From NCBI RefSeq assembly GCF_037042905.1, contig NC_087260.1, positions 10,788,001 to 10,852,000 on the forward strand: 64,000 bases of DNA, written 5' to 3'. The DNA is from Lytechinus pictus (taxonomy: Eukaryota). The stretch's first letter is position 1. Each line of letters begins with the position of its first letter. Made by a program: the position numbers and the translations under genes. Shown piece by piece: positions 10,001 to 33,100 of the stretch. The notes beneath the pieces are model-generated. The model saw only the letters and a list, made by a program, of their open reading frames with translations. It did no database searches and was not told the origin of the DNA.

Positions 10001-13000
10001 CCACTACCATCATCATCAACATCAACATGATCACCGCCACCTCTATCATCATCAATTTCAGAATCATCATCATCACCACCACCACCACCACCACCATCAT
10101 CGTCACCACCCTTTTCTTACGTAGTCCCGTAGTCTGCATCCTAGACGCCGTGTTGACTGTGTCTCCAAACAGGCAGTATCGGGGCATCTTCAGACCAACC
10201 ACACCAGCAACCAACGGGCCTGATGATGGAGAATAAGATTTAACAAGTAGTTTAAACAAGAAATCTTTATTTTGTAAGAATGATAGTTGGATTTAAATGG
10301 TTGTTGATCGTATGATCGCCATTGACGCCCTGACATTGCCCTGACGTCATTACAATTGGATAGTTATCAATTTCGACATTATACTTAAGAGATGGTTTCA
10401 ATAGCCATGCATATGAATGTGTCTATATTCATATGATTCGAAATTTGAGATTGAATGATGGTTTCATGTTCAAATTTTCAAATTAAAAGAAAAGTTATAA
10501 AGGAAATCAAAACAGACAGATTTCAGCTGATTAATTAAATAACAAGTCTTGTTCAAAATGAACGGAGACTAATCGTAAAGTAAGTGGTCTATATTATCCC
10601 CATCAAGCAAGAAACACATGTGTGTTGATTTTTCTGATTCTTTCAAACACTCAAAAGAATATTGATATAACAAAAAATAATGATAATTTACCCATGTGGA
10701 TTCCGAAACGAACTTTTATCTTCATGTGCGGTTTATGAGGCACCTCTAGGATGTTCACGTGATGCCTCAGGTCAAGGGTCACCGTGGCAATTTCACAAAC
10801 GTGTCGATCATGATGATCTGGAACGCCTATTAGTTCAATAAAAAATTAACAAAAAAGACAAAAGATAAACATCGGCAATATCCATTCAAAAGGAATTAAC
10901 ACTTTACAGAAAAAGACATTGCCTGTAACGATGAAGCAAAAAGCCGTTGTGTGAAAATCGACTCCTAAGAGAAGATCAATATAGTATTTTGAAAGAGGAT
11001 GCTAGTATTCCTTAAAAAATAAAACTTTTATTTAAAGTACAATATGATTTTCCTTTGAGGTGACACGACATATGCTCCTGCGATATTTGCTCGGGTACAT
11101 CTCAGAAGGCATAGGGTTAGAGTTAGAATTGTAATAGACTGTTTGGTTCAGATTGATGTAGAGTTTCGGACTCGGGTTTATTCATTTTTGTAGGTTAGGT
11201 TTAATGTTTGGCTTAACGTGCTGATTTTACATCGGAGCAATTGTCGCCGGAAAAAATGCCATGGACCCTCCTTTGTTGTGAATATATATTTTTTTTTATT
11301 CTAAATGACAAATAGAATGTAAATTCTGTTCCAAGGTATGTCGAGGAACGAGCTCTTATTCTAAGTACACTAAAGCCCTTGTATATATAGTCTCCCGGAA
11401 ATATATGTGATAGACACAAACTTGGTAAACAAATGTATTAAAATCTTAACTGCATCCTCATTAAAGAAGACATATATTCTCCATGCCCGACTGCCCCGCT
11501 CACTGCCTGATACATTTTAAGTTTAAATACATTTAGCATGTCCTCATGCTGATCAATGACGCGCCATAAGCAACCTGCAGTCATTCATTCTGACCTTTAT
11601 ATAATGCCTAATCCCTAATTACGCACAATCTCTAGGTATTGTCATACACACACCCATACACGCAAAAACGCGCACAATTACATATGCGTGTAATGATCAT
11701 CGTTATCATGAAAAGGTTTTTTTCAATATCAGAATGTCAGTCATCCGTCATCATCATCATCATCATCATCTTCATCTTCATCATCATCATCATCATCATC
11801 GTAATGANNNNNNNNNNNNNNNNNNNNNNNNNNNNNNNNNNNNNNNNNNNNNNNNNNNNNNNNNNNNNNNNNNNNNNNNNNNNNNNNNNNNNNNNNNNNN
11901 NNNNNNNNNNNNNNNNNNNNNNNNNNNNNNNNNNNNNNNNNNNNNNNNNNNNNNNNNNNNNNNNNNNNNNNNNNNNNNNNNNNNNNNNCCATCACTACAA
12001 CCACAAAGCCGCCATCATCGTCATCACATCATCACCACCACAATCGATCTCCGTCGTCGACATCATCATACCTGATGCAAGCATGTATGTTTCGTTGACC
12101 GTTTCGACCTTGTACACATCGTATAGCTCGATTCGAGAATCGAATAGCAGATATAATCCATTCAGCATTTCAACCACCTGGACAATGGACAGAAGTTAAA
12201 TGCAATGAAAGAGGTCGGGTTTATAATAATGGAATGCATTTATATGTGGTTTAGTTATTTATTATTATGTGGTTTCCAGTCATTAAAGGACAAGTCCACC
12301 CCAGAATCAAAATTTCATAATATTTTCTTTAAAAATCATTGATTCAAACAAAACAAAAATCTTGCTTTAACTCTCAACGGTTGCTGCATGGTTATTTTTT
12401 GAAATTTTGTTTTTTTTGAGCGAAACAATTATATTTCCATCACGATTCTGATTTGATCACGTGGTAGTATGACGTATACCACTCACATTATTTTTTGTGT
12501 TACTGCGCATGACCGTCTCTGTGTGCGAACCGCGGGCCCGGGAAGCGGTGCTCCCTCGCCGTCGATGCCTTCATCTTCCTCTTGCAGCCGAAAAACCCAT
12601 CATGCCGATGTGCCAAGCTTTTGGCTGCTCGAAAAAGCAGGGAGAACATCCGAATCACAGTTTCTTTTCGATTCCAAATCCCGTTACTGATCGAGAAAGG
12701 TGTGCAAAATGGTTACACAATATTGGGACAGACAAATTCAACGTGAAAACTTATAAATATGTGCAAAGTAGAGTTGTATGCGAGGATCATTTTGAGCCGC
12801 ATTGCTTTCAAGAAGATATACGAGCGAAAGTTATGGGATATACCTCCAAAAGGAAGTTGTTGAAGCCTGACGCCGTACCGACTTTGTTTGTCCATCGGCC
12901 AATTCCTACTCCTGAAAGGGCTTCTACCAAACGCCGTTACCAAGAATTGTCAAGAAAAGAGGTAAGCATTTTTTTTTTAATTTTCCGATCGCTCTACATT

Positions 13001-16000
13001 CACTGATTCAGCTTGCCTTGGCGTTGTACCGTACAGTCGCAGTGCCGTGACTACCGTAACTTTTCCCCCGAGCCAGCCGGCGCTGGCCAGTTACGTACCC
13101 GGCCGGGGGTACGGTCAGGCCAGGGGAGCGCGACCCAGCGGCAGCGGTGGAGCGATGATTGCCACCAACGCATCGCAGCATGCAGCAGTGCAAGCACAGC
13201 TCAGTGATAAATGAGAGCGAAGGCCGGCCAATCGAAGTGAAACTGCTGTACAAAGAAACAATTTAAACGCTAACAGCTACATATGCTGTAAGAACAGCAA
13301 CTTTGTAATTCAATATAAAGAAATAAAGAAAAGAACATTGATACTGTACCAAACTTACAAGCAACTTAGCAAGCTACATAGCTACATGTATTAAAACTAT
13401 TACTATCAACTTCAAAATTTAAGTCGAAGTCCATGTCCATGACCATGTCCTATGCCATATGGCTATGATTTGATGCACCTATCTGGCTGTTCATTTCACA
13501 CAAATTGAATGAAAATAGAGTAGACTCTACTATCTACTGTATATATGTGTACCTAGGCCTAGTTGAAATTTCACTTGACCATTTATTTGCATTTTGGCAT
13601 CATGAACGTGAAATCAAAATCAAATTTAGTGGCCTACACTTGAACAAGTACTCTTGGACATAGATTTCTTCTGTTTGCTGCGCAGCAGCGGTTACTTATT
13701 GCTGTAGTCTTGTTAACAGCGCTCGTTCTAAAAATATTATTGATGCGAAAATTTATCATATTAAATTCAATTTTAAGAGATTTTAAGAAATATAAGGCAG
13801 CATGGCATTCCATTGGCTTTGTACACCACAAGCAATGTACACATGAAAAGAGAGGCTGTGCCCCCCCCCCCTCTCTTTAATGTATGTTCTACAAGAATGT
13901 GCAATTGACCAATACATGTATATGTATTTCAATGTTTTTTCTACATGTACATTGTAATTACATTACATTTCCCATATACCTTTATAAACATGTACATGTA
14001 TAGTACATTTTATGCAGACACCAAGATCACTGAACTGAAGTATATACTAAAGTGTGAGGATGAATAAATGTATAATATAATAGGCCTACATGTACATGTA
14101 TTGGCATGTCCAAAAAAGAATGCTGCATTCCACTATGACAGATGTGGGAGGTCATTTGTTGTTTCCATTTTTATACTTGATAAGAAATAAAACCAATCTG
14201 ATGAGAATAATTGTTACCGCTACCATGATGCCGACCATAAACATTCTTTGTGCCTGATTTTTTTAAAACTTAATTTAGTCCAAAATTTGTTGTTGGTTTT
14301 TTTTTTCCATCAACATTTGAAATAGATTCTAAGAAAAAAACATTGGTACCAATTTCAAAAAGGTTATGTATTTTTTTTTTATTATTTATTACACTGTATA
14401 CTGTATGTTTTGCAAAATATTGAGGGGGGCACCAAAGTGCCTCTTTATAGAAAATATGTGCCAAAGAATTCTGCAAGATATTGTGTAATTTTTTTGCTGA
14501 GAAATGAGCATGCCATGTGTTGGCAGTCTTCAGTGTGTTGGGTTATTCATAAAATTAATTTTCAGCTAAGATTTCATAATTTCACAAAGTTCAGTTCGTA
14601 TACATGTAACTCTGATTTTTTCAGCTTTTTGATTTCACAGATTCAGACTTTCTCAAATGATTATTGCTTAGATCAATAAACATGTGCATGTGTTCTGTAA
14701 AACTGTTATTTCATTTTTTCAAAATTCTAGATCCTACAGAGCATTCCATCAACTTCCCAGAATGTTGAAATCGACCAAGACTTGACAAGTGATCGTGGTC
14801 ATGATGCTGATATATCTGATCAGACGGATCAGCAAGACAGTGACCTGTCAGATATGGTTCTATCTGAAGGCCCAGAGCCTTATGCGGTAAGTACAGGATA
14901 TTTTTTAATGAACTTTAGCTATATTAATCTACAAAATCATTTTTGTTAGTTCTGTAGCAATTCAAATAAATGAATTAAAGATTTTAAGGTCAGGTCCACC
15001 AAGGATATTTTTATTTGAATCAATAACTTATCTTACATCCACTTTTGATGAAATTTTCAATGTAACATGTACATGTACATGTAGGTTGATTTATTTCTAT
15101 TCAAATCACCTCTATGTTGCGGTGGACTTGTCCTTTTAGTCTACAAGTTATATATGTATGTCAAATATAAAATATAATTGAAATTGAATCATGTTCTGCA
15201 CATTCAAGGGTGGATTCAGGATTTTCCAAAGGGGGGAGGCTAGGCACATTTTCCCCCGAGCAAAACAAGGTTTTCACAAAAAATTGAAGGTTTCTCTACA
15301 TAAGATTTAAGGACATTCCAGTTATGGTTATGTGCACACTCCGCGTGCTGAAGTCACAATGGATTAACAGGTGATTAATTAGCTGTAGTAATAAGCTGAT
15401 TTTTCTCATCTGCATTCTAACTGCACATCCGATGTGTTATTTTATGAAGCTAATAAACTGGAATTGTTCTATGTTCTCTCCAATTTAAAAAAAATAACTC
15501 TGCAGTGCTGCAAAGTACATGTATGACAAATATGACCCCAATTTTGAATAAATGGTAGAGTGGTTTGGAATTTTTCCTTCCATAGATACAAAGCATTTGG
15601 CACGTTTTTATGTTTTCAAAAGCCTATTTACTCTAGTAAAAGTGCTGATAGTTTGAAAACAAGCACATGAACACCTATTTTTTATTGTTTGAACCTCGTA
15701 GGTATACCTTCCTCTACAACTTTACAAAGTTTGGTGAAAATGACTTAGGTTTTGAATGAAGTGCAGCATTTGTTGTACTTCTCAAATTTGTCATAAATTA
15801 CACATATTTTGAGATTGGGTTTTTGTTTTGTTTCTTTCACGCCATTTTTGAGAAATGACAGTGCTGTCAGACTTAAAAGAGCAAACAAATACTTGTAGCA
15901 ATATAAATAGATTATCCATCTATATAGCTCATATTGCAAAATTTGATGAAATTACATGGGCTTTAACACTTTGACTGAGGAATAGAGGTTCAAAACCAAT

Positions 16001-18109
16001 TGTAGTGATCTTGTGAGGTCTGAAAGTGCCAAATTGTGCAATTCTTATGAATATCCATTTGGATGAACTTTGAAGCAAAATTTAGCATATTTGGAATATT
16101 CAGGTGCTATAGTACCTGTGTGTAATGTTTGGTGAAAATAACATGAATTTTTCTTTAATTGTGGACCATCAAGCAAAAAAAAAAACTGTATGAATGTGTA
16201 TGATTGACATATTCCCATTACAAATTTCTGCTGTGATTTTCAGGGGGGGGGGCACACTTGTGTATTAAAGAGCGGCATATTTACTTAAAAAATAGATGCT
16301 GTGACTTTTAAGGAAGGGGGCACAGGCAGGATGTGCCCTCCCTCCCATTGGATTCGCCACTGTGCACGCTGCATTTAAAGGCCAAGTCCACCCCAGAAAA
16401 TTGTTGATTTGAATCGATAGAGAAAAATAAAGCAAACATAACGCTGCAAATTTCATCAAAATCGGATGTAAAATAAGAAAGTTATGACATTTTAAAGTTT
16501 CGCTTATTTTTCACAAAACAGTTAAACTCACAACTCAGCGATATGCAAATGAGAGAGTCGATGATGTCCATCACTCACTATTTCTTTTGTTTTTTATTGC
16601 TTGAATCATACAATATTTCAATTATTAAAGATTTGACAAGAAGGACCAACTAGACTTAACCTCAAACTGTTAAAATAATTGTAATTCCACATGTTCAGGG
16701 AGTTATAATTTTTTTTTTCACATGACAATGGGGAGAAAATTAGAATTGTTCATATTTCATATAATAAAATACAAAAGAAATAGTGAGTGGGTGACGTCAT
16801 CAGTCTGCCAATTTGCATACCGTCCAGGATGTGTATATAACTGTTTTGTGAAATTAACCGAAACTTTAAAATGTCATAATTTTCATATTTTACATCCGAT
16901 CTTGATGAAATTTTCATTGTTTTTCTTGATGGATTTTTCTCCTTTTATTCAAATTAACTTTTTGGTAGGGTGGACTTGGCCTTTAATGTGAAATAGCTGG
17001 GGAGCATTTAATATGAATATTTTTTTAGTTACTGAAATCCTTGAGTGGCCGTGGGCATATCATTTTAAAATTCACTGATAAAACTGTACATGTTCATGAA
17101 ATGCTCCCTTGGGCAGCTTCGTGATGCTTGTAATTTGCAAGCACTGACAAGTTGTCATTCTTTGACAGACAATAGGACAGCCAATGAAAACCAAGGATTT
17201 CATTTAAATTGTGTAAGCTGACAATTTTTAGATCACGTCAATTAATGTTTTATGTTTTTATTACCCAAAACTTTCAGTTTATGACAGTAACAACAGAACC
17301 TGAGGTACTTGTAAAGAGAAAAAGCACTGTTTTGGATGACACCCCAAGAAAAAAAAAGAGGAAGAGACGGGTATGTGTAGTATTATTTGATTTCTTTATT
17401 ATCTGTTATGATATGAGTACATATTTTGTATCTCTATGTTTGCCACTCCTGCAATACAAAGCTGATATTTTAATCAGGATTGCACTGTTAACTTATAAAG
17501 CCATCAGATACATGTACATGTTAGTATGTGAGTTCTTTATTACCTAAAAGAAAAGGAATTCACATGACCTTGATAATCGTAAGAGTGTAGATTTAATTGA
17601 CATAACTGGTATCAAATGTATTCTTTTTTTTTTATTTGAAGTCCTCTGCCATCCCTAGAATATTTAGTGTTGAATTATTTCCTTATATGGATTTTAGTTT
17701 CAGAGACTGAACTTCTTGATACACTGTACCTTTATTATATTTTTTCAGCGAAGTGGCCAAGGAAACCAGGAGGAAAGTACATGTAAGTGGGTGGTGGACC
17801 ACGCAACGCAAACTTTCGATATAAATCGATACCGTAAATTTACAAGTACCAAGGTCCAGACTGATCCAGATTGCTATGACTGTGGTATTCAAGTACCAGA
17901 ACTGGAATCAAAGATGGAACCAGAATTTGAAGTGGAAGTGGAAGAAGTGGAAGTGATGACATCTCCACTTTTAGACCATGAACATTATACATACACAGCC
18001 GGTACACCTAATAGAGTGGAAATGCTCAAGGTAGATATTAGTCTGGTTTACATCTAAAATCATCTCTCCCTCTTTCTTTCTTTCTACATAATTATACATG
18101 TGTGTGTAT

Positions 18110-18143: not shown

Positions 18144-21100
18144 ATCTCAAAGAATCTATATCTATATATTACATACATTACATTTATTTATATTACATTT
18201 ATGTTTGTGACATTATACTTATGTGAAAAATATATACCTAGTAGTCTCTTTTTGGAGTCATAATTAGTCTCAAAACTCTACCTGGACATTTTTTTTCTAC
18301 TTAACATGTCTTGTGCACGTTACGTTGCAGGTAGGAAACATCCAAGAAAGACCACCAAGCCCTCATAATCCTGCAATTGTGCTGACTCCTACATGTATGA
18401 CATCATCATCTGAGAGTGTGCCTGTACCTGTGATGGTGAGTTATGCTTATTATATTGTACATTAATGTAGATTTCATCCTGACAAAAACTTGCTATAGAT
18501 TAAAAGATGAAATTCAATGAAGTACACAATGAAAATTTCAGATGAATGTTGAATAAAAAGGTTTGTGCTTCACCTTATATTTGTATAAAAGAGTACATGT
18601 GCATTGGCAATGTGCAGAAGAAGGGAATACTTGTATTTATAAAAAAAAAATCTTTAATTTTTTGTTCTAAATAAGCATCCTGGCATATTACAATTGCTTC
18701 TAATCATTTCCTATCGAAATTGGATTTCTTGACCAGAACTTGAACTTACATAAAACATAAAATTTTATTGTTTTTCTTTTTTATTATTGGGGTATATACT
18801 TGTTATACAGTGACTTGTGTGCAGTGAACCACTTATAGTACAAACAAACATCTGTATTTTGATGCAAAATTTTATCACTATATTACTTGAAGAGAATGAA
18901 AGATGGCAATACATTAATGAAGGAGATAAATTACATATACATGTATAGATGAATTTTTGTAACAATGTTCTCTATATTCAATCTTGCCTGTTATCTTTAT
19001 CATTCTGCAGTCCTCAAGCAATGAAGAGTTATCCATTTGTGTACCTGCTGTCTCACGTTTAGTGCCAACCTCAGTGGCTAAGAGATCTGCTGCTGCACCA
19101 ATAAGCAGTGATTCTGATGTACTGCATACCGGACATACTTTGAGAGTAAGTCCCTGAAATGCTGGAATGATATCATACTTGACAATATCAATGTACCATT
19201 TTCATGTAAGGACAATAAATATGCACATCATAGTTTATGATGTTTGATTTTAAATTTAGGCATACAGTTCTACACTTCATTTCCGAAAATGCTTGATCAA
19301 AGAATCATAGAATCATTCTAATAATGACAAATTTTAACAAGTTAACTGGGTTCTGATTGTCCTAGAGAAAGAAAATTTGTTTGTTTATTCTCTTTTTCTG
19401 GCATTTACTCAGTTTTTTACTTTGTATACATAGTCTGGGGCTGTTTAAAAGTGAATTATTTTGATAATAATTACCCTCCATCAATTCAGTCTCAAATTCT
19501 TTGAATTTTTAATTTTTTTTTCAATAAACTTACAGGCTCTATCAATATTACAGAGCTGCCAAATACTATGGATTTCTGTATTTAGTACTGAAAAATTAGA
19601 ATACTGATGGTGTCATGCAAAATACTGATTTTTAGAATCTCACTTGTGTATGTGTTGTCCTGTGGTATTTCTTTGAAAACACTTAATTCCTTACCAAACT
19701 ACCTGATCTTCAGCTTTTAAAATACTGAAATGTTTTTGTGATTCAACAGACCCTGTTAAAATATGAACTATTACCATCATTGTCATTTTTTGTTTATTTT
19801 TATTTTTTAATGTTTTTCTTTTATATGCAGCAAGCTGCATGGAAGGGCAAGAACGCAACTGACTCAGATTTCTCCCCACCTCGAGCTTCACATCGGAGTA
19901 GTTCGAGTCCAACACCACCATCATCTGATTCGACTTCAGGATCAAACAGAGACCAATCATGCGTTTCATTGCCCAAGGTACATGTAAGTTCCAGCCTTGG
20001 CTAAGATCATGTGATCAGATTAAACTTTAAATGCATGATTTTGTATATGTACTTTAGTGTGATTTTTCATACGCCAAGCCTAATATTCTACAGTTTGTGA
20101 TTGATTATTTTTTGTAGGCATACAGCACAGGAAAAAAATATATGAGTTCTAACAAGGTTTGTGCATAACTTTGAAATAGAACTGTCACAATCATGGTCAT
20201 TTTAATATATTCTGTTATTTTTTTAATTTTCCACCTCTTCAAAATAAGTGGGGTGCAAAAATCAGTTACTTGTGATTCAACAGACCCTGTTAAAGTATGA
20301 TCTATTACCATCATTGTCATTTACGTATATTTTTATTATTTTTTAATGTTTTTCTTTTATGCAGCAAGCTGCATGGAAGGGCAAGAACACAACTGACTCA
20401 GATTTCTCCCCACCTCGAGCTCCACATCGGAGGAGTAGTTCGAGTCCAACACCACCATCATCTGATTCAGCTTCAGGATCAAACAAAGACCCTTCATACA
20501 TTCCATCACCTCAAGCAAGTTCCAGCTCAGACCCAGATGAGGAAACGTGGATGAAATACTGTACAGACCCTAAATATATTGTATTTGGGTCTCAGTTGGA
20601 TCGTCTTCTGCATTCACTACAGTGTACCAAGTGTAGCGGTGGGCACATCTCGGAAATCCAGAAGAAAGTACAGGGATCAATGCTCACGGCAACCGTTTTG
20701 TGTGTGTGTGGCAATATTGTCACACGGTGGGAGTCCCATCCTGTAATTGGATCGGCGTCTGTAGGGAATTTATTGTGTTCGTCGAGTGCACTTTTTAGTG
20801 GCTTATCTTTTGAGAGTTTAGATTTCTTCTCTTCAGTGCTTAACATGGAGTTTGTAGGTCGCACCCAGTTTTTTGACTACCAGGATAAGTACTTTAATGC
20901 TGCAATCAACTCTGCATTCAAGAGCAACTTGTCTGAAGCAAGAATTGAAGTAAGCAATAGTGGTGCTCCACTCACCGTTTGTGGTGACGGACGATGTGAT
21001 AGTCCTGGTTATAACGCCAAATACTGTAGCTACACGATGATGGAGGCCAAAACCTCAAAGATAGTAGCGATGAATCTGGTCCAAGTGAGCGAAGCCACAA

Positions 21101-24100
21101 GTTCCAACGCCATGGAAAAGATTGGGTTTCAGAGAGCATTGGATGGGCTGCTGGAGGCAGGACTAAATATTGGAACTGTAGCCACAGATCGCCATCTTGG
21201 AATTAGGAAACTTATGAAAGAGAGATACCCAAACATCGACCACCAATATGACGTTTGGCATGTTAAGAAGTCTGTTACGAAGAAACTAGTCGCAAAGACT
21301 AAGCATAAAGAATGTGGAGACTTGCTCCCATGGACCAAGTGCATCACTACCCACCTGTGGTGGTGTGCAGCTAACTGCCGGGAGGATCGAGAGATGATTG
21401 TCGAAATGTGGCAATCGCTGACGCACCACATTTGCGATGTGCATTCGTGGAATTCCGCTGATAAGTATCACCGATGTGCCCATGATGAGCTTGACCCCCA
21501 ACGAAAATTCAAGTGGCTGACTCCAGGTTCTGCTGCGCATAAAGCCCTACAAGAAATCTTGTTTGACAAGAATTTGACAGATGCAATTGGTCACATAACC
21601 AAAGCATGCCACACAGGCGAACTCGAATCTTTCCACAATATGCTGTTGAAGTACTGTCCTAAGCGTAAGCATTACCATTACGCTGGTATGCAGGCAAGGT
21701 TACAGCTTGCAGTGCTGGACCACAACCATAACACTGCAAGGAAGCCAGCAGTCATCAAAAAGGGACCAAGGAAGGGAGAACAGAAGGTTGCTTTAAAGTA
21801 CTCAAAACGCACCAAGGAATGGGTAGCGAAATTGATGAAAGAGAAGAAAGACTATTCCTACCTCGTGGAAATCCTGGAGAATATCTTGAAGATGAGAAGT
21901 GGAGAAATTGAAGTGGAAACAGTGGTACTGCCTGAACTTCCAAAGAATGTGGCACCAACGCCACGTCCATCAAAGGAAGAAGTGATGGCTCGCAAATATA
22001 CTAGATTTTGAATAAATGGTTTAAGGACTTTCAATTATCTCCAGGAAGTCTACATGTAGCGTGATTGTCCCTCTGGAGTTGATTGTTATCTGTATGGTCA
22101 ATATTCATTGAGTAATGGAAGGATTTTGTTTTTTTGTAAGCATGAGAATTTAAGAATTATTTTGAATGAAAGATGTACCTCTGCTGGTTGTACCTGGTTT
22201 TTTATCTGCTTTAATATACATGTACATGTATATGCAGCTCTATCAATACTTTTTGAAGTCAATGTATTGAAACAAACAAATGTAAATGTTTTCATTATCT
22301 ACCATATCATTGTGCTATCCATGAATAATTGCCCTTAAACAGCATTATGTTATCATTTGGGAAAGCATTGTAGCTTGGTTGAAATGTATGTTGCAAGACA
22401 AATCTACATGTACAAGACAAAACACTACTGTTACATAACAATAATACAGTACATGTAACTTAAATCTGATCTGTGTTTTATTGTACATGTAGTTCAGCAG
22501 TGTCATGAAAATAAGTTGTGGAGGCACCTTTTTTCTTTCATTACATGTTAGAGTTAAAGCTACATGTATCTAGAACAAGAGGAATGGTTGATGTGATATA
22601 CCAAAATTTAAGAGACTCACTTTCACAATTGTTTTCACGTCGGAGGCATTATCTCTCTTTACCTTTCCTTCTTGTTCTCGTAATAACTCAAGAATCATTT
22701 GACAGATTGACATCATATTTGTATCATTTATGCACATTGGACAATGATTATATTTGCATATATATAGGTGTTATATTATGGTTATCTGAAAAGCTTTGCA
22801 GGTCACAAGATGAAATGTCACAGAGATCATTATATCTCTTGAAATGTTTTGTGCTTGTGACACTTGTTACACCTCATTAACCATTCTCGGATTTAACAAG
22901 TACATTGTAAGTACATGTATGTTTACTTAGTTGACAGTGGTCTCCTTAGTTTGGAGTTACAGAGATCAAAGTGCACAGAGTTCTTACATCTTCAAATACA
23001 TCAGTCATGATAATTCAAGAACTTCTTGCAGAACTTCAAACTCATAATGCATGTAGTAATTACAATAATCTGTTTGGTTTTTTTAATGGCTTGTTTGTGT
23101 AAATATGATTTAATCTTCAGTTAATTATTTTTAATACACCGCAATATGTGAATGTATACAAAAAGAAAATTTGTTTATAAATGATTATGCAATGCCAGTT
23201 CAAGTCCTACTGTACATGATGATGAAACAAGTTTTCTTTTTTAGAGGCCAAGGTGCTTTGTGGCTATGAATCCATTGTAAAATTAAATGCCTTAACTTAC
23301 GTAGCCTTAACTTACGTAGGCTTAACCAATCCTGACACTTACGCAGTAACCTCTTTGGCTTTGGAAATTATTAGATGGGCTATTTCTCCAATGTATGAAC
23401 ATATTTGATGTTTAAAGATAGTTGTACATATTCATTATTGGATTTAGCATGTGACATCAGCATTTGATGTGTAAAGATAGTTGTACATATTCATTATTGG
23501 ATTTAGCATGTGACATCAGCATTTGATCTGTAAAGATAGTTGTACATATTCATTATTGGATTTAGCACGTGACATCAGCATTTGATCTGTTTTTCTCAGC
23601 ATGTAGTGCATCTATGAAATGATAGAAATTGTGAAGAATTGTAATTGTCTCACACATGTACTTTTAACCCTAATTCTCGGGGGGGGGGGTGGGGGGGGGG
23701 TGCCGTAATGCCCCCCCCTTGACAGTTTTCGCGATATATCTGCTGCGCAAAATTTTTCGACCTCACCGCTTACTGACTTTTTCCTGTCAAGTCTCGCACC
23801 AATTTTGAGACCAAATTTGTGACGCTCGGGTAAGCAGTTATGACATTACGCAACATTATGTAACTGCATGTCAGACCCAAAATTGCTCATAAACGTGATT
23901 TCATGTACAAATTCAATGCAAATTGTGTATTTAGCTAAAATTCATAAATGCATCATTATTTCTACTTTTACTGATTAAACTTCATTAATTTTGCCTTGTT
24001 TATTAAACTAAAAAAAACAAAAAGTAAAAAACATCCGTCCAGACATTCAGCATCTCATTAACTGAATTAAAGGACAGACATAAAGTTGGTCGCTTACATG

Positions 24101-27100
24101 TATGAACATGTACATGTAGAATGCAAAAGATGTAAATAGTTATTAATGTGTTTATGAGTAGAGATTATTTTTTAAATGTTTTCTGCATTCCAGATATTGT
24201 AAATATTGTACAATATGTACATGTAACACTGGAGGTGATCAACTGAATTATCACTCAGTGAATGAGATGATGTGTATCTATATTCTTTTTTAAATCAAAC
24301 ATCTCCAGTATATTGCAGACTGGCATTTCTCAAAGTGACATTTTCAGATACTACTACAATGGCAAAAATATCTAATATGGGTGCATGTAACATTGATACC
24401 ACATGCAGTATGCAAATAGATGTATGAAATTTAAATAATCATCCAAGTATACATGTACTGAATAGGTTTCTCTGTGTGTATTGATTTTGGTAACATTTAA
24501 AACTTTGCTCTTATTGGCTCAATATCTGGACTATTTTTTTTTTAACCAACAGGTTTATCAATTTTTCACCATACAAACATACAAAACAGGCTATGTTTTC
24601 TTGCTATATTGTTTTATTTATTTTTATGGGGTGGGTGTATTGTTAGCTCTTTGGAACTGATATTTTGTTGATATTAGATTTATTGATTCAAAGTTAAATC
24701 TTCATACATTACATAATGGGTTTTATCTGTCCTGTTTCCAGCATGAAGCAAGAATATACAGTAGCAGAACAACAAAATATAAACATTTTGCAAATGAAAA
24801 CACTTTCTTTAAATTATTTGCATTCATTTTGAAAAGTTGATAAAGAGTTTAATAAGAAGAGTTTGATAAAAGTTTGATTAGAGGAGTTTGGTAAGAGTTT
24901 AATAAGAAGAGTTTGATAATAAGAGTTTGATTAGAAGAGTTTGATTAGAAGCATTCGATAAGAGTTTGTTTTGAAAATGGTGATGTTTGGATGACGATGG
25001 TGGTGAAGAAGATTGAAGTGGTGGTGATATGTGATAGTGGTGAAGACAAAAAATTGTAAAAAATGATATAACTTTGTCTTATTAGTTTTCATAGCTCCAA
25101 CAAAATTATGCTCATACAGCACCTAATCCTTTATTAAAATTTATTCATACTATTTAACAAAATTGCAGTACCAACCTTCTGTTCATATCAAAAGGCCTAA
25201 AATAATGGAAAGTTTAAACTTTTAAGAGACCATTGTGAATTGTCCTCGTAGTATTTTACAAGGGCTGTGGAATCGGGAACGGGGGGGGGGGGGGGGTGAA
25301 ATTTTACCAAAACCATGTATAAATCGTGAAAATTGCAATCTGAATAGATTTTTGGCTCAGCCCCAACCCCTTCCAAGACCATTTCAAAGCCAGTGCCATG
25401 TTTTTTTTTATTATGCTCTGTTTTATACCCACTTTACCGATCATTTACTCTTGCTTTCTTCCATCCCTTATTTCTGCCTACCCCTTCCCAATCCCTCTCT
25501 TTCATTCTTCCATCCCAAATTTTTATCTTGCATTTCCCCGACCTTGTTTTGGATTCTTCCAATGATCCCAATTCTCTTGCCTTGTTTTATTCCATCCCCC
25601 TTCCGTCTCGTGCTTTCCTCCACTCCCCACCCCATTTCTCTTTTTTCTCTTCCACACCAACCCTTCCCTCTTCCTTTTTCTTTCCTGTACCCCTCCTCCC
25701 TCTTGCTTCCAACCATTATCCCACCCCATCTTTCACTTTCTTCCATCCCCCTACCCTGGCTCTCTTGCTTACCTCCATTCCCCTATCCGCATCCTTGCTT
25801 GGTTTTCCATTCCCTGCCCATTTCTCTCTTGCTTTCTTCCACACCTACCCTTCCCTCTTACTTTTTCCATTCCTGCACCCCTCCTCCCTCTTGCTTTTGA
25901 CCATTACCCCCACCCCATCTCTCGCTTACTTTCTTTCATTCCCCTGCCACGTCCATCTTGCTTTCCAAATTTCCAAACCCGATTTCTCCCTTACTTTCTC
26001 CCATCACACCAAATCTTTCTCTCTTGCGTTCTTATACATGTACCTCATCCCTTCTCTGTCCTGCTTCTTCCACCTCACCTTACTATTTTCCTTATTTCTG
26101 TGTCTCTTCTTCATCCATCTTTAATTTTGACCTTGCAAGAATACATTACCAGTACATATATATAAATATAAGTCAAAATGTCCTGTAATTCATGCTTTAT
26201 TTCTCTGAACATTCATGTACATGTAAACTTTGCATGTACATGTATATATTACTAAAAACAATGTGACTTGTAAATAAAGGGGTATTCATGAATTGACAAT
26301 TGGCAACGAACCTGGTAATACACGTATCTCGGGTACAAAGTACATTGTATAACACAAGTTGATATGAATGTACATGTAAGAGGCATTTTCTTATATCATT
26401 TCATTAAAAAAGTGTAGTTGAGACCCTACAAATATATTCTCTAATATTTCATGGACAAACTTAATGGATATATACATGAACAACACTAATACACACCAAT
26501 ACTAATTTATTATGATCTAAACCATAATCATAAATATGACGAATATTCGCAATTTATCTCGCTACAGACATGTCTAAAGACTCTGGACACCTACATGTAA
26601 CAATACCAACATCTAGGTAGACATACAAATTCAAAGTATTTACTAGTGTTATATATAAAATATGCGTCCTCTGTGTCTGTTATTTATTAATAAATGTGTT
26701 CAACTCTTACCATAGGAAGGAAAAATTATGGCCATTGCTAGATTTCCACAGCTGACACTACCTTTGCACTTACATGTTTGTGATTTCAAAACCAATAAAA
26801 CTCATAAATAATTTTTTTTTTATCTTTGTACATACATCATGTATGTACAAAGATTTAAAAAAAATATTTATGAGTTTTATTGGTTTTGAAATCACAAACA
26901 TGTAAGTGCAAAGGTAGTGTCAGCTGTGGAAATCTAGCAATGTACATGTACAAGATAAGGCTCTAATATACTGTATATTTTTGTTTTTATCCTACATGTA
27001 ATAGAACAGAACAGAATCCTGTTACAAATACCATACACAATAACTTGCATGCCATGACCTCATGAATATAAACTGTATCCAAACTCTTGCATCAAAATAA

Positions 27101-30100
27101 ACATTATCAACAGGCAATCAGGCACCATAACACCTTCATGTCGGCATCGGTCTAAAATCTTCTACAAACCAACAATTTTAGTGATGAATGAAAATACAAA
27201 GGAAGTGATATCGTGTACATAATTTTAGTAACATAGCTAAAGCTATCACAAAAAAAAATAAATTGGTCACATTGCGTATTCCTACAGCACATCGGATCAT
27301 ACACCACCACAGTGATGCATCAGACACACGAGTAAACATACTTATGTAACTTTCTGGGAAAATCTGTAGACTACATGTATGGTACTGGAAAAAATTGGGA
27401 CATGTGGGCAGAAAAAGGGGAACAAAATAAAGGGATGTATGACTACATCATAACCTACATTATTCCACTGTATATCATTCAAGTCATCTTTCCCTTCCCC
27501 TCTCAAAAATTCACTTGCCAATGTATGGGATACTAATAAATGGGTAAAACAAGGCAGAAAAAGGGGAAAATAAAAGGAAGAGATGTATGACTATGACTAC
27601 ATCATAACCTACATTATTCCACTGTATATCATTCAAGTCATCTTCTCCTTCCCCTATCAAAAATTCACTTGCCAATATACTACTTAATGGGTAATATACT
27701 AATAATTAATGGGATACTAATGGGTAAAACAAAATAAAAAGAAATTTCACTGTCTCTTGTACCATTCTGAAGTAAAAAAAAAAAAAAAGTAGCTAAATTG
27801 CATGGTGTTCAGGAACTTCAATGTCTTCGTTGTCCTCCCCGCGCCGAAATCCTATATAGACCCCTGATGGCTGTGGGAATTCCTGGCGGATCCTTGAAAC
27901 AACACAGGAGGGTATGACTTTCCGGACGCCCCTTCCAAGGTACCCATGCACCAGGTACGTAAAAAGCCTATAGCTGGCATAACGATACGACCTATGAATA
28001 AAAAAAATAAATGGAAACAAAATTAATGGAAATTATAATAATTTACATCAAAGTAAATTTAATCATATGATTCTGTGCAGTTGTGGCTCCAAATTTTTAA
28101 AGCAAAAAAAAAAATAAAAACAATACCATTACCAGCTCATGTACTCAGTCTCTTGCACCATGGGTATTGTTACATGAAGATATTGATGATGAGTACGAAA
28201 TCATGGGATAACAGTGTTTTTCTATTATTGATCTCCAAGTACAATGAAAGGCCAGATTAATAAAAAAAAATTAATAGAAATCCATTCACGGCCTATTTTG
28301 CTCCAGTTTTGATGAGATTTTTACTTTGTTTAGCCATCTTTATTAAGGTAACGTCATGTCAATGGCTAGCATGGCCATGGATTTATACATGTACCGGTAA
28401 TTATACATCTACATTTCAGATTTTCGCATTTTCCCCCCTTGGATTTCCACCCATCGACTGCCCGTCTTATTATACTTTGTAGTACAGATACATACGGGTA
28501 GATTTTATTTTTAGTAAAACATCTACATGGTCTATGTGCACACTACACAGAATAAGACATTCATTTATATACGGTATGCCCTTTCACTTTATGAATATGA
28601 ATCTAACTTACTTGTTGTCAAGTTCTTGGTTTGGGGCTCTTCCTCTAACACGTGCACGGGCTCTGTGTCCGCGAATGTCCCTCCGAGCAACGTTGAAAAC
28701 ACGCAATACTACTCTCGTTAGACATACTCTAACAAAATCTTCGTGGTCTCTGACACAACCATGAGCCTGAAGGTCCAAGCACCTTGCTATTTCTCTGCAA
28801 CAAATACATTCAATAGCTGTGGGCATCACAACACAGTTGCCACAGCCACACCACTCGTTGTTGGCAAGCCTTGCCTCTGCCTGGGCCTGGGCGATAGCCT
28901 CTGGATCAGGGTCTTCGTCCGCGGCAGCAGGGTATCCATTTCCTACGACTGGTGCTTCATTTATGTCCCATTCTGGCTGGAACGCGAATCCAGGAGGTCC
29001 AGCCATTGTCTACTGCACCATAGATATAAAATAAGAAAATTTCCAAAACTCCGATTCGAGGGAATATACTGTAAATGATAAACAAACGGTCTAAAATCGA
29101 TGTCGCAAGTTGATTGATGTAAAAACAGCAAACGCAGAAAGCTTGTATGAGGTGTGTACATGTACTGTATACTGTACCGGTACTGGTATCGGCTAGATCA
29201 AATTCAGTCACAGTGCGTACGTGGGTCGAGTTCGCCCGATCAAACTCAGCAACAAAATTGACTGATAAATTCAGGAATATGGTCTAAAAAGTTATGTAGA
29301 TACCTTGTAATACAATTTGATGTATACCCGTCGCTGTAAACGTCATTCATCACTATTAAAATACATATAATAAAATATATCTTCGTAAAGTACCGAGAAT
29401 TGGTCTACGAATAAATTTTGCTCGGCGGGCGAGATTATACCGGTCGAGATCGAGGGCAGTGTCGCACAACACGGCTCGCTGCTAGATCTCGCGCTAGCGC
29501 GCGCTACGAGTGCAAAGCTAGTAGAATCGCATCGTTTCTTAGCGAGAGAGCGGAAGTCTGTTGACCCAAATCATAGTGAGTGCCCTACGTCACAGAAAAT
29601 CGCGTCGCAATGCATTGTGGGGTAGAACAGCCTCTTTCGAAATTTTCTAACCCGATTTTAACACAATCTTTAAAAAATCATTAAAAATCTCCCGATGACC
29701 AATTTTCGAAAAGAAAACTATTTTTGGGTATCTCATATTTTTGTCTTTCGGTAAAACACCTTTTTAAGCCGGCCTGGACTTGTCCTTTAAAACTTACACT
29801 ATTTACGAATATATCTTTATCAGTCTGCTCAGTGGTTGAATTGATTAAAGTTGATATATAGGATGGGCATCACGCAAGGCTTATACCTTGGTAGGTATTC
29901 TGAACAGTTCTCTCTCATCCTAATATCTTCATTATTGTAATCATCGTAACAAAATTTGAACACCATCACATACGGTATGTGGTGGTGTTGATACCACGGT
30001 GATTTTGTTTTCCTTTACCGAAGTATGATATGAAGACGATGGAGAATGTTTTCCATTGAAGCAAAGAAGGTATATTTTCCAATTCATCAGAGAGTTTTGA

Positions 30101-33100
30101 TATCACGAAGATAGATGATTCGGATAGAAAAAAATATCCGACTTTTGTTCTTGTCTTGTTTCAGACAGTTCCCTATTTGGTTTTCCCTTTTGAAAGTCGT
30201 AAAACAATTCGCCAAGTATCATATTTCATTTCCGCCGATTCAAACACCCGGTATACACAGTCCATGGCCATGTCAAATTTACGCCACGGATAGTTACCTC
30301 CATCGGGGAGCTGATTCGTCCTCAAAACCGACTGGAGCCGGCGATGTTGACAAACGACTAAGATCGATTCATAGAGTTTGCCATCCCCTGTCTTGTTTTT
30401 AGTTCGCTATTTAGCCCCCCCCCCCCCTCCCCTTCGAAAATCTTAAAAATATTCACCATCTATTACGTTTTATTCCCGTTAATTCAAATACCCGGTTCAA
30501 ACCGGCATCCATGGTCGGATTACCCCCGGTTATTTACCTCCATCGGGGCGCTTCGTCCACAGAGCCGACTGAAACCGGCGATGTCGGCAAACATGACCGA
30601 GGCTGACTCGTACAGTTCACCATTCACGCCTTCCGTATTCATCAACCGTAGAGCAACCGAAGGCGGCAACATCGAATTAAGAAGGTAAGTGGATCGCTTT
30701 TTCTCCTTGTTGAGTTCCTAGGCAATGACGGACATGGAATAGATGATTTTAAAACAAATATCACATTGATTTATGGGTGCCCCCCCCCCTCCCCCTCGTG
30801 GATTCGTTTCATAAAAGTATGGTACTGTGCTATTATGGCAAATTGGCAACTACCATGGTAGTAAGTAGCCAATCAAAAGGTTTCCACGATGGTCACACTA
30901 ATGTCTCAAAGTTACAATAAATTCTTTATGAAACGGGTCCAATTCCCGATAGAACATCACTGAGTACGGACTATCGTGTTTTTTTTTTCAAATATAATAA
31001 TTCAAACAAGGATTACATTTAACATGGTGATGGATAATTACTAGTGTTAATCACTAACTGGAAAGCTGAAAATCCCAAATAAGTATGAATCACATCTTCA
31101 CATTATTTATTAGTGAACAGACTTTGAACACTCACACAGTGGACACACTGTTTGACACTCTGAAGCTTTGAACACACTTTGAACACTCACACCGTGGACA
31201 CACTGTGTGACACTCTCAAGCTTTGAACACACTTTGAACACTCACACCGTGGACACACCGTGTGACATTCTCAAGCTTTGAACCCACTTTGAACACTCAC
31301 ACCGTGGACACACTGTGTGACACTCTGAAGCTTTGAGCACACTTTGAACACTCTCACCGTGGACACACTGTATGATCCTCTGAAGCTTTGAACACACTGA
31401 ACACTCACACCGTGGACACATTGTATGATCCTCTGAAGCTTTGAACACACTTTGAACACTCACACCGTGGACACACTGTGTGACACTCTCAAGCTTTGAA
31501 CACACTTTGAACACTCACACCGTGGACACACCGTGTGACATTCTCAAGCTTTGAACACACTTTGAACACTCACACCGTGGACACACTGTGTGACACTCTG
31601 AAGCTTTGAGCACACTTTGAACACTCTCACCGTGGGCACACTGTATGATCCTCTGAAGCTTTGAACACACTGAACACTCACACCGTGGACACATTGTATG
31701 ATCCTCTGAAGCTTTGAACACACTTTGAACATTCACACCGTGGACACACCGTGTGACACTCTCAAGCTTTGAACACATTTTGAACACTCTCACCGTGGAC
31801 ACACTGTGTGACACTCAAGCTTTGAACACACTTTCAACACTCACACCGTGTACACAATGTATGATCCTCTGAAGCTTTGAACACACTTTGAACACTCACA
31901 CCGTGTGACACTCTGAAGCTTTGAAAACACTTTGAACACTCACACCGTGGACAGACTGTGTGACACTCTGGAGCTTTGAACACACTGAACACTCACACTG
32001 TGGACACACTGTATGATCCTCTGAAGCTTTGAACACACTTTGAACACTCACACCGTGGACACACTGTGTGACACTCTCAAGCTTTGAACACACTTTGAAC
32101 ACTCACACCGTGGACACACTGTGTGACACTCAAGCTTCGAACACACTGTGAACACTTACACCATGGACACACTATGTGACACTCTGAAGATGTGAACACA
32201 CTGTGAACACTCACACCGTGGACACACTGTGTGACACTCAAGCTTCGCACACCCCTTTGAACATTCGCACTGTGAACACACTGTGAGAACTCACACTGTG
32301 GACACACTGTGTAATACTCTAACTTTGAACATACTATGAACACACGGTGAAAATTCACACTGAGAATACACTGTTAACACACTGTGGACACTGATACTCT
32401 TAATACTGTGAACACCCTCTAAAAACACTGTGAACACACTCTGTGACACTGTGATCTTTCCAGCAGGGCGTGTGTATGATACCTTGGTCTGTGTTGCCAG
32501 CGTAAGGGCGTAGTTTTGTAAGACTGTGGTCAATGACCAGATCGCCCGGAGGGTGAGCGGACACATTATGATGACGACTACCACGAGGAAGATGCTGACG
32601 GCGATGTTTTCAGTGTCGTCCTCAAGCTCCTTCTCGAGTCGGGTCAAGATCTCATCGGCCATATTCTTCTGAACCTTCTCTAGTATGTCGATATAGACCT
32701 GGACAAGAGAGAGAGAGAGAGAGAGAGGGAGGGGATAGAGTAGAGAGGGAGAGAGATTGGGAGGGAGAGGGAGAGAGAGCGGGTCGGTCATTTCGAAGTT
32801 CCAATAACTTTTTCAAGTGAAAAAGAAAAAGTCAATATGTTGAAATACTATTTGAGCGCATACTGTTTTTATAAACTCTTGTGCTTCGACAAAATGACAA
32901 ACAAAATGAATCAAACAACAGGTATGTAGGTCTTTAAAAAAAACTGCAATTTAAAACGATCTGAGAAACGAACAAACGAACGAACGACAAACAAAAAATG
33001 AATAAACAAAATAATTAACAAATGTACGAACGGAAAAACGAACGAATAAACGAGTACACGAACAAACTCACGAACGAATAAACGACATAAACGAAAAATC

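What the first reader, a model, noticed from the sequence alone, without database searches (positions are those of the whole stretch)
27793..29006. Transposon-borne stand-alone P2X7 ballast-like Zn/guanine-nucleotide module
Seen: the Cys cluster WCGCGNC-x8-ECICCRE and the R-x-A-x-YR...PSC-x3-RIRQEFP...Y-x-GF block, with no channel domain. Known: in vertebrate P2X7 this fold binds two Zn ions and GDP/GTP. Inference: KolX may be a nucleotide-sensing regulator or cofactor of transposition, and such elements are a candidate source of the domain captured by P2X7. Its location inside a GTP-using cyclase gene is probably coincidental.
Basis: partly seen in the sequence, partly recalled or inferred. 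Interest (0 to 1): 0.7.

Follow-up and report, generated by a model that had tools for sequence, protein, structure and literature searches.

The report
KolX gene of a Kolobok transposon
This small sea-urchin gene is the known "KolX" accessory gene of a Kolobok cut-and-paste transposon. It folds like the zinc-binding tail of the P2X7 receptor, a link published in 2022, so the reading is correct but not new, and what the protein does is still untested.

Summary
On the minus strand, 29006-28612 and 27991-27793 are joined across a 620-nt GT-AG intron. They encode a 197-aa protein identical to NCBI's "P2X purinoceptor 7-like" of Lytechinus pictus.

- **Fold:** it matches Pfam P2RX7_C (E 3.5e-13) and rat P2X7 residues 456-599 (E 1.4e-8). 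An AlphaFold model (pLDDT 81) matches only P2X7 ballast domains (VIA-align Z about 11; next hit Z 2.6).
- **Ligand sites:** all seven family-conserved zinc cysteines are present. Only two of the five rat GDP-contact residues are kept (R546, R578).
- **Expression:** RNA contigs carry the spliced form at high depth.
- **Transposon context:** the gene lies tail-to-tail with a THAP-DDE Kolobok transposase gene. The pair sits inside a 17.5-kb unit with TTAA duplications and 12-bp AGG...CCT inverted ends. That unit fills an intron of a NIT-guanylate-cyclase gene.
- **Recurrence:** the same layout occurs at four other echinoid loci and, as a remnant, in amphioxus.

Kojima 2022 (PMC9587614) described KolX as a ballast fold and as the source of the P2X7 tail. 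Rump 2020 (PMC7016195) reported sea-urchin stand-alone ballast proteins. This scan also reached the same verdict on other DNA of this genome. Guanine-nucleotide sensing remains unsupported. Interest is low.

The parts
12283..12298 (+). Left end of the element: TTAA target duplication (12283-12286) followed by the 12-bp terminal inverted repeat AGGACAAGTCCA
   Evidence: (pair I10). It has the 5'-RR terminus and TTAA flank that Kojima 2022 gives for Kolobok.
12602..13006 (+). First transposase exon, encoding the THAP zinc finger (Met at 12602, inside ORF 12497-13006)
   Evidence: Pfam THAP, E 1.7e-17. tblastn of the full-length echinoid transposases P0011, P0012 and P0020 starts at 12602.
16379..16982 (.). 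Nested 604-bp miniature element with about 136-nt inverted ends, TTAA flanks and the related terminus AGGCCAAGTCCACCC, inside a transposase intron
   Evidence: (pair I1).
17209..18057 (+). Probable linker exons of the transposase: a PRKKKRKRR nuclear-localisation-like stretch and a weakly conserved acidic/Cys stretch. Exon borders were not determined.
   Evidence: ORFs. Weak tblastn hit of P0009 at 17833-18048. NCBI models a 1007-aa THAP protein ending at 22011.
20359..22011 (+). Last transposase exon: a 550-aa open frame with the DDD/E core ([23 protein letters not shown])
   Evidence: 308 homologues. In a 16-protein alignment D210, D214, D277, D298/H301 and E423/H426 are invariant.
27300..27792 (-). 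KolX 3' untranslated region. At least this much is covered by transcript contigs, and its end was not mapped.
   Evidence: tables 2 and 8.
27793..27991 (-). KolX exon 2 (residues 132-197 plus stop): [18 protein letters not shown] and RIRQEFP...YIGF
27992..28611 (-). KolX intron, 620 nt, GT-AG, splitting a codon after its second base
   Evidence: The joint is seen in contigs of runs X1 and X3. Its position is the same in echinoid, Hydractinia and Branchiostoma copies.
28612..29006 (-). KolX exon 1 (residues 1-131 plus two bases): acidic N-terminus, WCGCGNC, ECICCRE, HGC and an Arg-rich loop
29007..29250 (-). KolX 5' untranslated region. Transcript contigs end at 29157 in run X1 and 29250 in run X3.
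   Evidence: table 8.
29775..29790 (-). Right end of the element: terminal inverted repeat AGGACAAGTCCA (read on the minus strand) followed by the TTAA duplication (29787-29790)
11998..12195 (-). Host exon just outside the left end: guanylate cyclase catalytic domain, Pfam profile positions 29-74
   Evidence: E 2e-8.
30523..30717 (-). Host exon just outside the right end: end of the HNOBA linker and start of the cyclase catalytic domain, Pfam profile positions 4-32
   Evidence: NCBI's 478-aa NIT gene model ends near 30520.

Best explanation
The gene is KolX, the second gene of a Kol0-lineage Kolobok DNA transposon of the sea urchin Lytechinus pictus.

**The element.** It spans 12287-29786 (17.5 kb). 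It carries a multi-exon THAP-DDD/E transposase gene on the + strand and the two-exon KolX gene on the - strand, tail to tail. It is bounded by 12-bp AGG...CCT inverted ends and TTAA duplications. It sits in an intron inside the catalytic domain of a NIT-guanylate-cyclase gene.

**The protein.** KolX is a 197-aa soluble protein. Its core (about residues 38-183) has the cytoplasmic-ballast fold of P2X7, with the seven cysteines that hold the two-zinc cluster. It is transcribed and correctly spliced.

**Shown:** the identity, the fold, the linkage to the transposase and the expression.

**Inferred (about 35%):** KolX acts in the nucleus as a zinc-stabilised accessory subunit or regulator of the Kolobok transposase. 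In this reading the conserved Arg pair (R135, R167) and the KolX-specific basic segment HxxLGRGVR(K/R)VIP form a phosphate-binding surface for DNA or a nucleotide. This would not be a copy of the rat P2X7 GDP pocket.
For: **Domain and fold**
- Pfam P2RX7_C, E 3.5e-13.
- phmmer against rat P2X7 6u9v residues 456-599, E 1.4e-8. A family profile gives E 8e-11.
- AlphaFold with 42 homologues gives pLDDT 81.3 and pTM 0.71.
- In Foldseek the top 14 hits are all P2X7: probability 1.00, E 2.4e-4 to 1.4e-3, against 2.1 for the next hit.
- VIA-align gives Z 9.8-11.1, rmsd about 3 A over 117-125 residues, model 38-183 against P2X7 414-595. The next hit has Z 2.6.
- Across 42 relatives the zinc cysteines C53, C55, C58, C69, C70, C84 and C161 are 95-100% conserved.

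**Expression**
- A spliced transcript is present at depth 123 and 55.

**Transposon context**
- THAP domain.
- The transposase core has invariant catalytic D, D, D/CxxH and E positions, and NCBI models an intact 1007-aa protein.
- TTAA plus a 12-bp perfect inverted repeat is the only pair scoring at least 11 of 14 among 442 TTAA pairs tested.
- The termini follow Kolobok's 5'-RR...YY-3' and TTAA rule.
- The ends lie 91 bp and 736 bp from the flanking host exons, so the element accounts for 17.5 kb of an 18.3-kb intron.

**Recurrence of the layout THAP, core, then KolX on the opposite strand**
- L005 and L004 (L. pictus), L006 (L. variegatus) and L001 (an ENA contig) all show it, at 48-65% transposase identity.
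- L004 and L005 have their own TTAA-AGG... end candidates at the same distances from the genes.
- In amphioxus a transposase remnant lies tail-to-tail with KolX.

**Literature**
- Kojima 2022 describes this same two-gene Kol0 structure.
Against: - The inverted repeat is only 12 bp. The same 12-mer is the terminus of abundant miniature elements in this window, so a chance pairing of unrelated ends is not fully excluded.
- No empty site was examined.
- No near-identical second copy of this family was seen. The exact protein is on one contig, and the closest paralogue is 60% identical. Recent mobility of this copy is therefore not shown.
- Transposase splicing and expression were not tested.
- The functional part is inference only. 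No experiment on any KolX protein was found in the paper search.
- I could not read the model's coordinates. The geometry of the zinc site and of the putative basic pocket was therefore not checked.
Confidence: 0.9

Rival explanations
1. KolX binds GDP or GTP as the P2X7 ballast does, and couples transposition to the cell's guanine-nucleotide state.
For: - The fold is the same as the GDP-binding ballast.
- The two arginines that Rump 2020 found conserved across Metazoa are kept. R546 corresponds to R135 (34 of 36 relatives). R578 corresponds to R167 (30 of 34 relatives).
- Y550 and the F/Y-P motif are also kept.
Against: - Three of the five rat contact residues are lost, and lost family-wide.
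- H547 is Y in 24 of 36 relatives.
- R574 is V, I, L or A in 35 of 35.
- K583 is E, S, A or D in 31 of 34, so often acidic.
- R167 is His in the two other L. pictus paralogues.
- No binding data exist for any stand-alone ballast protein. Rump 2020 states that this remains to be shown.
Confidence: 0.2
2. This copy is no longer a transposon gene in function. It has been co-opted by the host, as zebrafish nanor was, and is kept for a host role such as stage-specific expression.
For: - It appears to be single-copy.
- The reading frame is intact.
- Expression is strong but sample-dependent. Transcript contigs occur in eight runs of two studies. Depth is 123 and 55 in runs X1 and X3, but only 3-6 reads fall on it in 1.3 billion letters of runs X16 and X17.
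- Kojima 2022 regards nanor as a domesticated KolX.
Against: - It still lies inside a unit with an open, catalytically complete transposase gene, end repeats and TTAA duplications.
- No ortholog of high identity was returned from L. variegatus or S. purpuratus. A conserved host gene would be expected to have one.
Confidence: 0.1
3. The ballast gene is an ordinary neighbour gene that happens to lie near a Kolobok transposase, and the 17.5-kb unit is an artefact of pairing two unrelated miniature-element ends.
For: The AGGACAAGTCCA terminus occurs six times in the window with at most one mismatch, against 0.28 expected. Such ends are therefore common here.
Against: - The gene pair recurs with the same order, orientation and spacing at four other echinoid loci in different genomic contexts, and as a remnant in amphioxus.
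- The right end does not continue like the miniature-element family.
- The host exons closely bracket the proposed ends.
- The published Kol0 structure is the same.
Confidence: 0.03

Closest known systems
KolX protein of Kol0-lineage Kolobok transposons (type element Kolobok-1_XT; Kojima 2022, Mob DNA 13:24, PMC9587614)
   Same: - It is the second gene of a two-gene Kolobok element that has a DDD/E transposase.
- It shows ballast-fold similarity to P2X7 residues 476-595.
- It has seven conserved cysteines.
- The element has TTAA duplications and 5'-RR...YY-3' termini.
   Different: - This is an echinoderm copy. The paper lists Kol0 in vertebrates, annelids, cnidarians and sponges.
- Both genes are intron-bearing and the element is long, at 17.5 kb.
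- Nothing differs in kind.
Cytoplasmic ballast domain of vertebrate P2X7 (rat 6U9V/6U9W; Pfam PF20478)
   Same: - The fold is the same: Z about 11 and rmsd about 3 A over about 120 residues.
- The zinc cysteines C477, C479, C482, C498, C499, C506 and C572 are kept.
- R546, Y550, R578 and F581-P582 are kept.
   Different: - There is no channel, no TM helices and no C-cys anchor.
- C573 is Val.
- The GDP contacts H547, R574 and K583 are not kept.
- KolX has its own conserved N-terminal PYxFEP-like motif (P11), the basic HxxLGRGVR(K/R)VIP segment and, in echinoids, an Arg-rich loop (residues 108-124).
- An intron splits the domain, whereas the P2X7 ballast is one exon (Rump 2020).
Stand-alone ZCD/nanor-like proteins (Rump et al. 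2020, PMC7016195; Panther PTHR36981), including S. purpuratus SPU_000568
   Same: - They are small proteins consisting only of the zinc-coordinating cysteine domain.
- They share the three consensus blocks: PxWCxCxxC, CCR...GxC and (L/I/V)PSC.x3IRxx(F/Y)P.
   Different: - Rump et al. treated them as host genes and did not notice the transposon context.
- They report H547 as kept in their sea-urchin sequence. Here it is Tyr.

Membership tests
P2X7 cytoplasmic ballast / ZCD fold (Pfam PF20478) | Significant sequence match to the family profile above the curated cut-off | tested here: met
   50.4 bits against a cut-off of 23.5, E 3.5e-13. PDB sequence hits are only to P2X7 below E 1e-5.
P2X7 cytoplasmic ballast / ZCD fold (Pfam PF20478) | Three-dimensional fold superposes on the solved ballast domain | tested here: met
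   The model has pLDDT 81. Foldseek gives probability 1.00 to rat, human and mouse P2X7. VIA-align gives Z 9.8-11.1 and maps model 38-183 to chain 414-595.
P2X7 cytoplasmic ballast / ZCD fold (Pfam PF20478) | Zinc-coordinating cysteine set (PxWCxCxxC; CC...C; PSC) | tested here: met
   C53, C55, C58, C69, C70, C84 and C161 are present and 95-100% conserved in 42 relatives. The eighth P2X7 cysteine, C573, is Val or Ala in the family. Metal binding itself was not tested.
P2X7 cytoplasmic ballast / ZCD fold (Pfam PF20478) | High-affinity guanine-nucleotide site (R546, H547, R574, R578, K583 in rat) | tested here: not met
   Only R546 and R578 are kept. The other three are Y, V and Q here and are non-basic across the family. 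This is a feature of mammalian P2X7, not of the fold family as Rump 2020 defines it.
Kolobok superfamily, Kol0 lineage | DDD/E transposase of Kolobok type with a C/DxxH motif | tested here: met
   The motifs [17 protein letters not shown] and ELESFH are present and invariant in a 16-protein alignment. There are 308 homologues. The motif-to-catalytic-residue assignment rests on my knowledge of Kolobok transposases and on Kojima 2022's description. No Repbase comparison was possible.
Kolobok superfamily, Kol0 lineage | TTAA target-site duplication with 5'-RR...YY-3' termini | tested here: met
   The sequence reads TTAA|AGGACAAGTCCA...TGGACTTGTCCT|TTAA at 12283 and 29790. The paralogous elements L004 and L005 have TTAA|AGG... 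candidates. No empty site was examined.
Kolobok superfamily, Kol0 lineage | A second gene encoding KolX inside the element | tested here: met
   KolX lies 5.8 kb downstream of the transposase stop on the opposite strand, inside the ends. The same layout is found in L001, L004, L005 and L006.
Kolobok superfamily, Kol0 lineage | Mobility (several copies, insertion polymorphism) | tested here: inconclusive
The exact KolX protein is on one contig only, and the closest paralogue is 60% identical. Miniature elements sharing the terminal 12-20 nt are present. I did not test that.

The most novel reading that the evidence does not exclude
KolX may be a general accessory module of TTAA-targeting cut-and-paste transposons rather than of Kolobok alone.

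- In Hydractinia, the closest non-echinoderm homologue keeps all seven zinc cysteines. It sits 4.7 kb downstream of a piggyBac-type transposase gene, and no Kolobok transposase lies within 10 kb.
- That unit is present twice at 99.8% identity.
- If the module has moved between two unrelated TTAA-specific superfamilies, its conserved Arg pair and basic loop would probably serve a step common to both, such as TTAA target handling or excision-site repair, possibly gated by a bound nucleotide.
Probability: 0.1. Interest if true: 0.5.

Novelty: new member of a known kind. Interest (0 to 1): 0.15.

Why it matters
It adds little that is new. It gives a clean, expressed echinoderm example of a two-gene Kol0 Kolobok element. 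It also confirms by predicted structure what was published from sequence comparison in 2022.

Two small points may be useful to specialists:
- The GDP-contact set of mammalian P2X7 is not a family feature of KolX. 'Zn module' is therefore safe, and 'guanine-nucleotide module' is not.
- An intron splits the domain at the same place in sea-urchin, hydrozoan and amphioxus copies, whereas the P2X7 ballast is one exon. This constrains how the capture by a P2X4-like gene could have happened.

The biochemical role of KolX remains an open question that can be tested directly.

Tried and rejected
- **Shallow alignment for folding.** A first AlphaFold run with only 7 sequences gave pLDDT 41 and was discarded. 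A 42-sequence alignment was needed.
- **Default pairwise alignment at the exon junction.** The phmmer alignment to rat P2X7 placed R546 and H547 opposite D130 and N131. The family-profile alignment and the multiple alignment place them opposite R135 and Y136. I used the latter.
- **Long inverted repeats.** None was found around the gene pair, only the 12-bp ends.
- **Ends of the L. variegatus copy (L006).** None scored at least 11 of 14. Its right flank is only 1.2 kb.
- **Uninformative contigs.** L002 and L003 carry KolX, but the contigs are too short to reach a transposase.
- **Hydractinia unit.** I looked for TTAA-flanked ends of the 15.7-kb repeated unit and found none.
- **Cyclase motif search.** My simple regular expression for FSDIVGFT-type motifs missed the diverged exon. 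A frame-by-frame listing plus Pfam found it.
- **Searches not run.** I did not run the large representative protein search, because the family scans had already settled the identity.
- **Limits met.** The model's coordinates are not readable here, so zinc-site and pocket geometry were not measured.
Full report
**1. What is in the sequence.**

The window is animal DNA of about 30-45% G+C with three N runs, which I left untouched. On the minus strand an open frame runs from the ATG at 29006 to a GTAAGT donor at 28611. A second frame follows a polypyrimidine-CATAG acceptor and begins at 27991.

Joining 29006-28612 to 27991-27793 keeps the frame and gives a 197-aa protein. The only slip is the spacer between WCGCGNC and ECICCRE, which is 7 residues, not 8.

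This product is identical, end to end, to an NCBI protein of the sea urchin Lytechinus pictus named 'P2X purinoceptor 7-like' (P0001). That names the genome and independently supports the gene model.

Contigs of two public runs skip exactly these 620 nt. Depth is 123 and 55 over the exons and 0-4 in the intron. Transcript contigs reach from at least 27300 to 29157 (run X1) or 29250 (run X3). The kind of these runs is only guessed as RNA, and the exon/intron depth contrast is what shows it.

Two deep RNA runs of 2026 gave only 3-6 reads in about 1.3 billion letters each. Expression therefore depends on the sample.

**2. What the protein is.**

- **Pfam.** It finds only P2RX7_C, at residues 40-181, E 3.5e-13. 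No channel domain is present.
- **PDB by sequence.** The only hits below E 1e-5 are P2X7 chains, with rat 6u9v residues 456-599 at E 1.4e-8. A profile of seven relatives gives E 8e-11.
- **Structure.** A shallow alignment gave a useless model of pLDDT 41. With 42 relatives from sea urchins, cnidarians, molluscs, ticks, amphioxus, lungfish and toad, AlphaFold gave pLDDT 81.3 and pTM 0.71, with blocks of about 90 or more over most of residues 41-170, lower in the loop at 111-130.
- **Foldseek.** The top 14 hits are all rat, human and mouse P2X7: probability 1.00, E 2.4e-4 to 1.4e-3, rmsd about 3 A over about 136-140 columns in the better alignments. The next hit has E 2.1.
- **VIA-align.** Z is 9.8-11.1 with rmsd about 3 A over 117-125 residues. 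It maps model 38-183 onto chain 414-595, which is the ballast and not the channel. The next hit has Z 2.6.

The fold assignment stands.

**3. Ligand sites.**

The profile alignment to rat P2X7 and the 42-sequence alignment give these correspondences:

| Rat P2X7 | KolX here | In the KolX family |
|---|---|---|
| C477, C479, C482, C498, C499, C506, C572 | C53, C55, C58, C69, C70, C84, C161 | 95-100% conserved |
| C573 | V162 | V or A |
| R546 | R135 | R in 34 of 36 |
| H547 | Y136 | Y in 24 of 36, H in 3 |
| R574 | V163 | V, I, L or A in all 35 |
| R578 | R167 | R in 30 of 34; H in the two other L. pictus paralogues |
| K583 | Q172 | E, S, A or D in 31 of 34 |

The seven conserved cysteines are the set Kojima 2022 describes around the two zinc ions. 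The five GDP contacts are those listed by Rump 2020 after McCarthy 2019.

Two of five contacts survive. The two lost basic residues are replaced by hydrophobic or acidic ones across the family. This matches Rump's finding for invertebrates. 'Zn module' is well supported by sequence. 'Guanine-nucleotide module' is not.

KolX proteins have conserved features of their own that P2X7 lacks:
- an N-terminal PYxFEP-like motif, with P11 nearly invariant;
- the basic segment HxxLGRGVR(K/R)VIP just before the last cysteine;
- in echinoids, an Arg-rich low-confidence loop ([16 protein letters not shown], residues 108-124).

**4. Is it transposon-borne?**

Upstream on the + strand lies a THAP-finger exon (12602-13006, Pfam E 1.7e-17). 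A 550-aa open exon follows at 20359-22011, with hundreds of homologues. That exon carries [17 protein letters not shown] and ELESFH, and all of these positions are invariant in a 16-protein alignment. NCBI models an intact 1007-aa THAP protein ending at 22011. KolX lies 5.8 kb beyond its stop on the other strand.

I tested this claim as follows.

- **Ends.** Both ends read TTAA|AGGACAAGTCCA. This is the only pair scoring at least 11 of 14 among 442 TTAA pairs tested. It obeys Kolobok's TTAA and 5'-RR...YY-3' rule.
- **Caveat.** The same 12-mer ends abundant miniature elements here: 16379-16982 with TTAA flanks, and further ends at 15134 and 37095. It occurs six times against 0.28 expected. A chance pairing had to be considered.
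- **Recurrent layout.** The order THAP, core, then KolX on the opposite strand recurs at L005 and L004 (L. pictus), L006 (L. variegatus, in an ABC-transporter gene) and L001 (an ENA contig). Transposase identity is only 48-65%.
- **Matching ends in paralogues.** L004 and L005 have their own TTAA|AGG... end candidates about 200-310 bp before the THAP exon, and about 600 bp (L005) or within about 780 bp (L004) beyond the KolX 5' end. The window shows the same spacing.
- **Host exons.** The ends lie 91 bp and 736 bp from the two host exons that bracket them. These are guanylate-cyclase catalytic-domain exons at 11998-12195 and 30523-30717, with Pfam PF00211 profile positions 29-74 and 4-32. The element therefore makes up 17.5 kb of an 18.3-kb intron.
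- **Amphioxus.** A KolX gene lies tail-to-tail with a remnant of the transposase C-terminus.

I conclude that KolX is part of the element. Recent mobility of this copy is not shown. The exact protein is on one contig only, and the nearest paralogue is 60% identical.

**5. Position in the cyclase gene.**

The insertion is in an intron within the catalytic domain, with KolX on the host gene's strand. Other copies sit in or beside unrelated genes. NCBI's model of the upstream NIT gene (478 aa) stops at about 30520, exactly at this intron. I could not test whether the host transcript still splices across 18 kb.

**6. What is already known.**

- Kojima 2022 (Mob DNA 13:24, PMC9587614) states that Kol0-lineage Kolobok elements encode a transposase and KolX.
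- The same paper states that KolX resembles P2X7 residues 476-595 and adopts the ballast fold with seven conserved cysteines.
- It also states that P2X7 arose by fusion of a P2X4-like gene with a KolX gene, and that zebrafish nanor is a domesticated KolX.
- Rump 2020 (PMC7016195) had already listed stand-alone ballast (ZCD) proteins in S. purpuratus and across Metazoa, and discussed the partial conservation of the GDP site.
- Sea-urchin genome papers mention Kolobok.
- 'KolX' as a protein name appears in only that one paper among those searched. I found no experimental work on it.
- This scan has reached the same verdict on two other stretches of this genome.

**7. How it most likely works.**

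Shown here:
- a zinc-cysteine ballast-fold protein;
- encoded inside a Kolobok element;
- kept together with the transposase in very divergent copies, at least in sea urchins and amphioxus (in Hydractinia the closest homologue lies beside a piggyBac-type transposase instead; section 9);
- transcribed and spliced.

Inferred: because the pairing is kept at 48-65% transposase identity, KolX is probably needed for the element's propagation. My best guess, at about 35%, is a zinc-stabilised nuclear accessory subunit or regulator of the transposase. In this guess the conserved Arg pair and the KolX-specific basic segment bind phosphate groups of DNA or of a nucleotide.

The alternatives are a true GDP/GTP sensor (about 20%), a host-co-opted gene (about 10%) and an unrelated neighbour gene (about 3%).

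**8. Verdict.**

This is a new echinoderm member of a known kind, and interest is low.

**9. Side observation worth a look.**

In Hydractinia, the closest non-echinoderm homologue has all seven cysteines. It sits next to a piggyBac-type transposase gene, and no Kolobok transposase was found within 10 kb. The unit is present twice at 99.8% identity. Kojima mentions only piggyBac-borne relatives that lack most of the cysteines.

Noticed in passing
L008:3000-10756 and L009:3138-10756 (Hydractinia symbiolongicarpus CM055248.1): The closest non-echinoderm KolX homologue (P0006) keeps all seven zinc cysteines. It lies 4.7 kb downstream, on the same strand, of a piggyBac-type transposase gene (PF13843). 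No Kolobok transposase lies within 10 kb. The unit of at least 15.7 kb occurs twice, 23 kb apart, at 99.8% identity. No TTAA-flanked inverted ends were found at its borders.
   Followed up: partly
window 11998-12195 and 30523-30717 (minus strand): The Kolobok element fills the intron between two catalytic-domain exons of the NIT-guanylate-cyclase gene. NCBI's NIT gene model (478 aa) ends at about 30520, exactly at this intron, so the insertion may break the annotation or the transcript. The downstream exon reads VETVNETYM where cyclases usually have ETIGDAYM, a motif I recall from memory and did not test.
   Followed up: partly
window 16379-16982; also ends at 15123-15134 and 37084-37095: These are miniature inverted-repeat elements with TTAA or TTAA-like flanks. 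Their termini (AGGMCAAGTCCACCC...) match the first 12-20 nt of the big element's left end. They are probably non-autonomous relatives, and one is nested in a transposase intron.
   Followed up: partly
window 19736-19969 and 20270-20506: A tandem duplication with 534-537 bp spacing and 86-89% identity copies the 5' part of the last transposase exon, including a second [10 protein letters not shown]... start.
   Followed up: no
window 28779-28952: Reads of RNA run X17 carry C>T at 28827 and 28892 and diverge completely to the left of 28802. This suggests a second expressed, related KolX copy or a very divergent allele.
   Followed up: no
KolX intron, window 27992-28611; L002, L004, L005, L006, L008, L010: The intron just before SYRY (the R546 helix) is at the same place in sea-urchin, Hydractinia and Branchiostoma copies. 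The P2X7 ballast is encoded by one exon (Rump 2020). This is relevant to how the domain was captured.
   Followed up: partly
window 31015-31998: A tandem array with a 53-55 bp period and at least 16 units lies in the host intron upstream of the element. It creates long spurious Cys-rich open frames on the minus strand.
   Followed up: no
L010:12345-12587 (Branchiostoma lanceolatum): A remnant of a Kolobok transposase C-terminus (44% identity to residues 473-550) lies tail-to-tail 1.1 kb from an annotated 216-aa KolX-like gene. This is a decayed element whose KolX gene is still modelled as intact.
   Followed up: no
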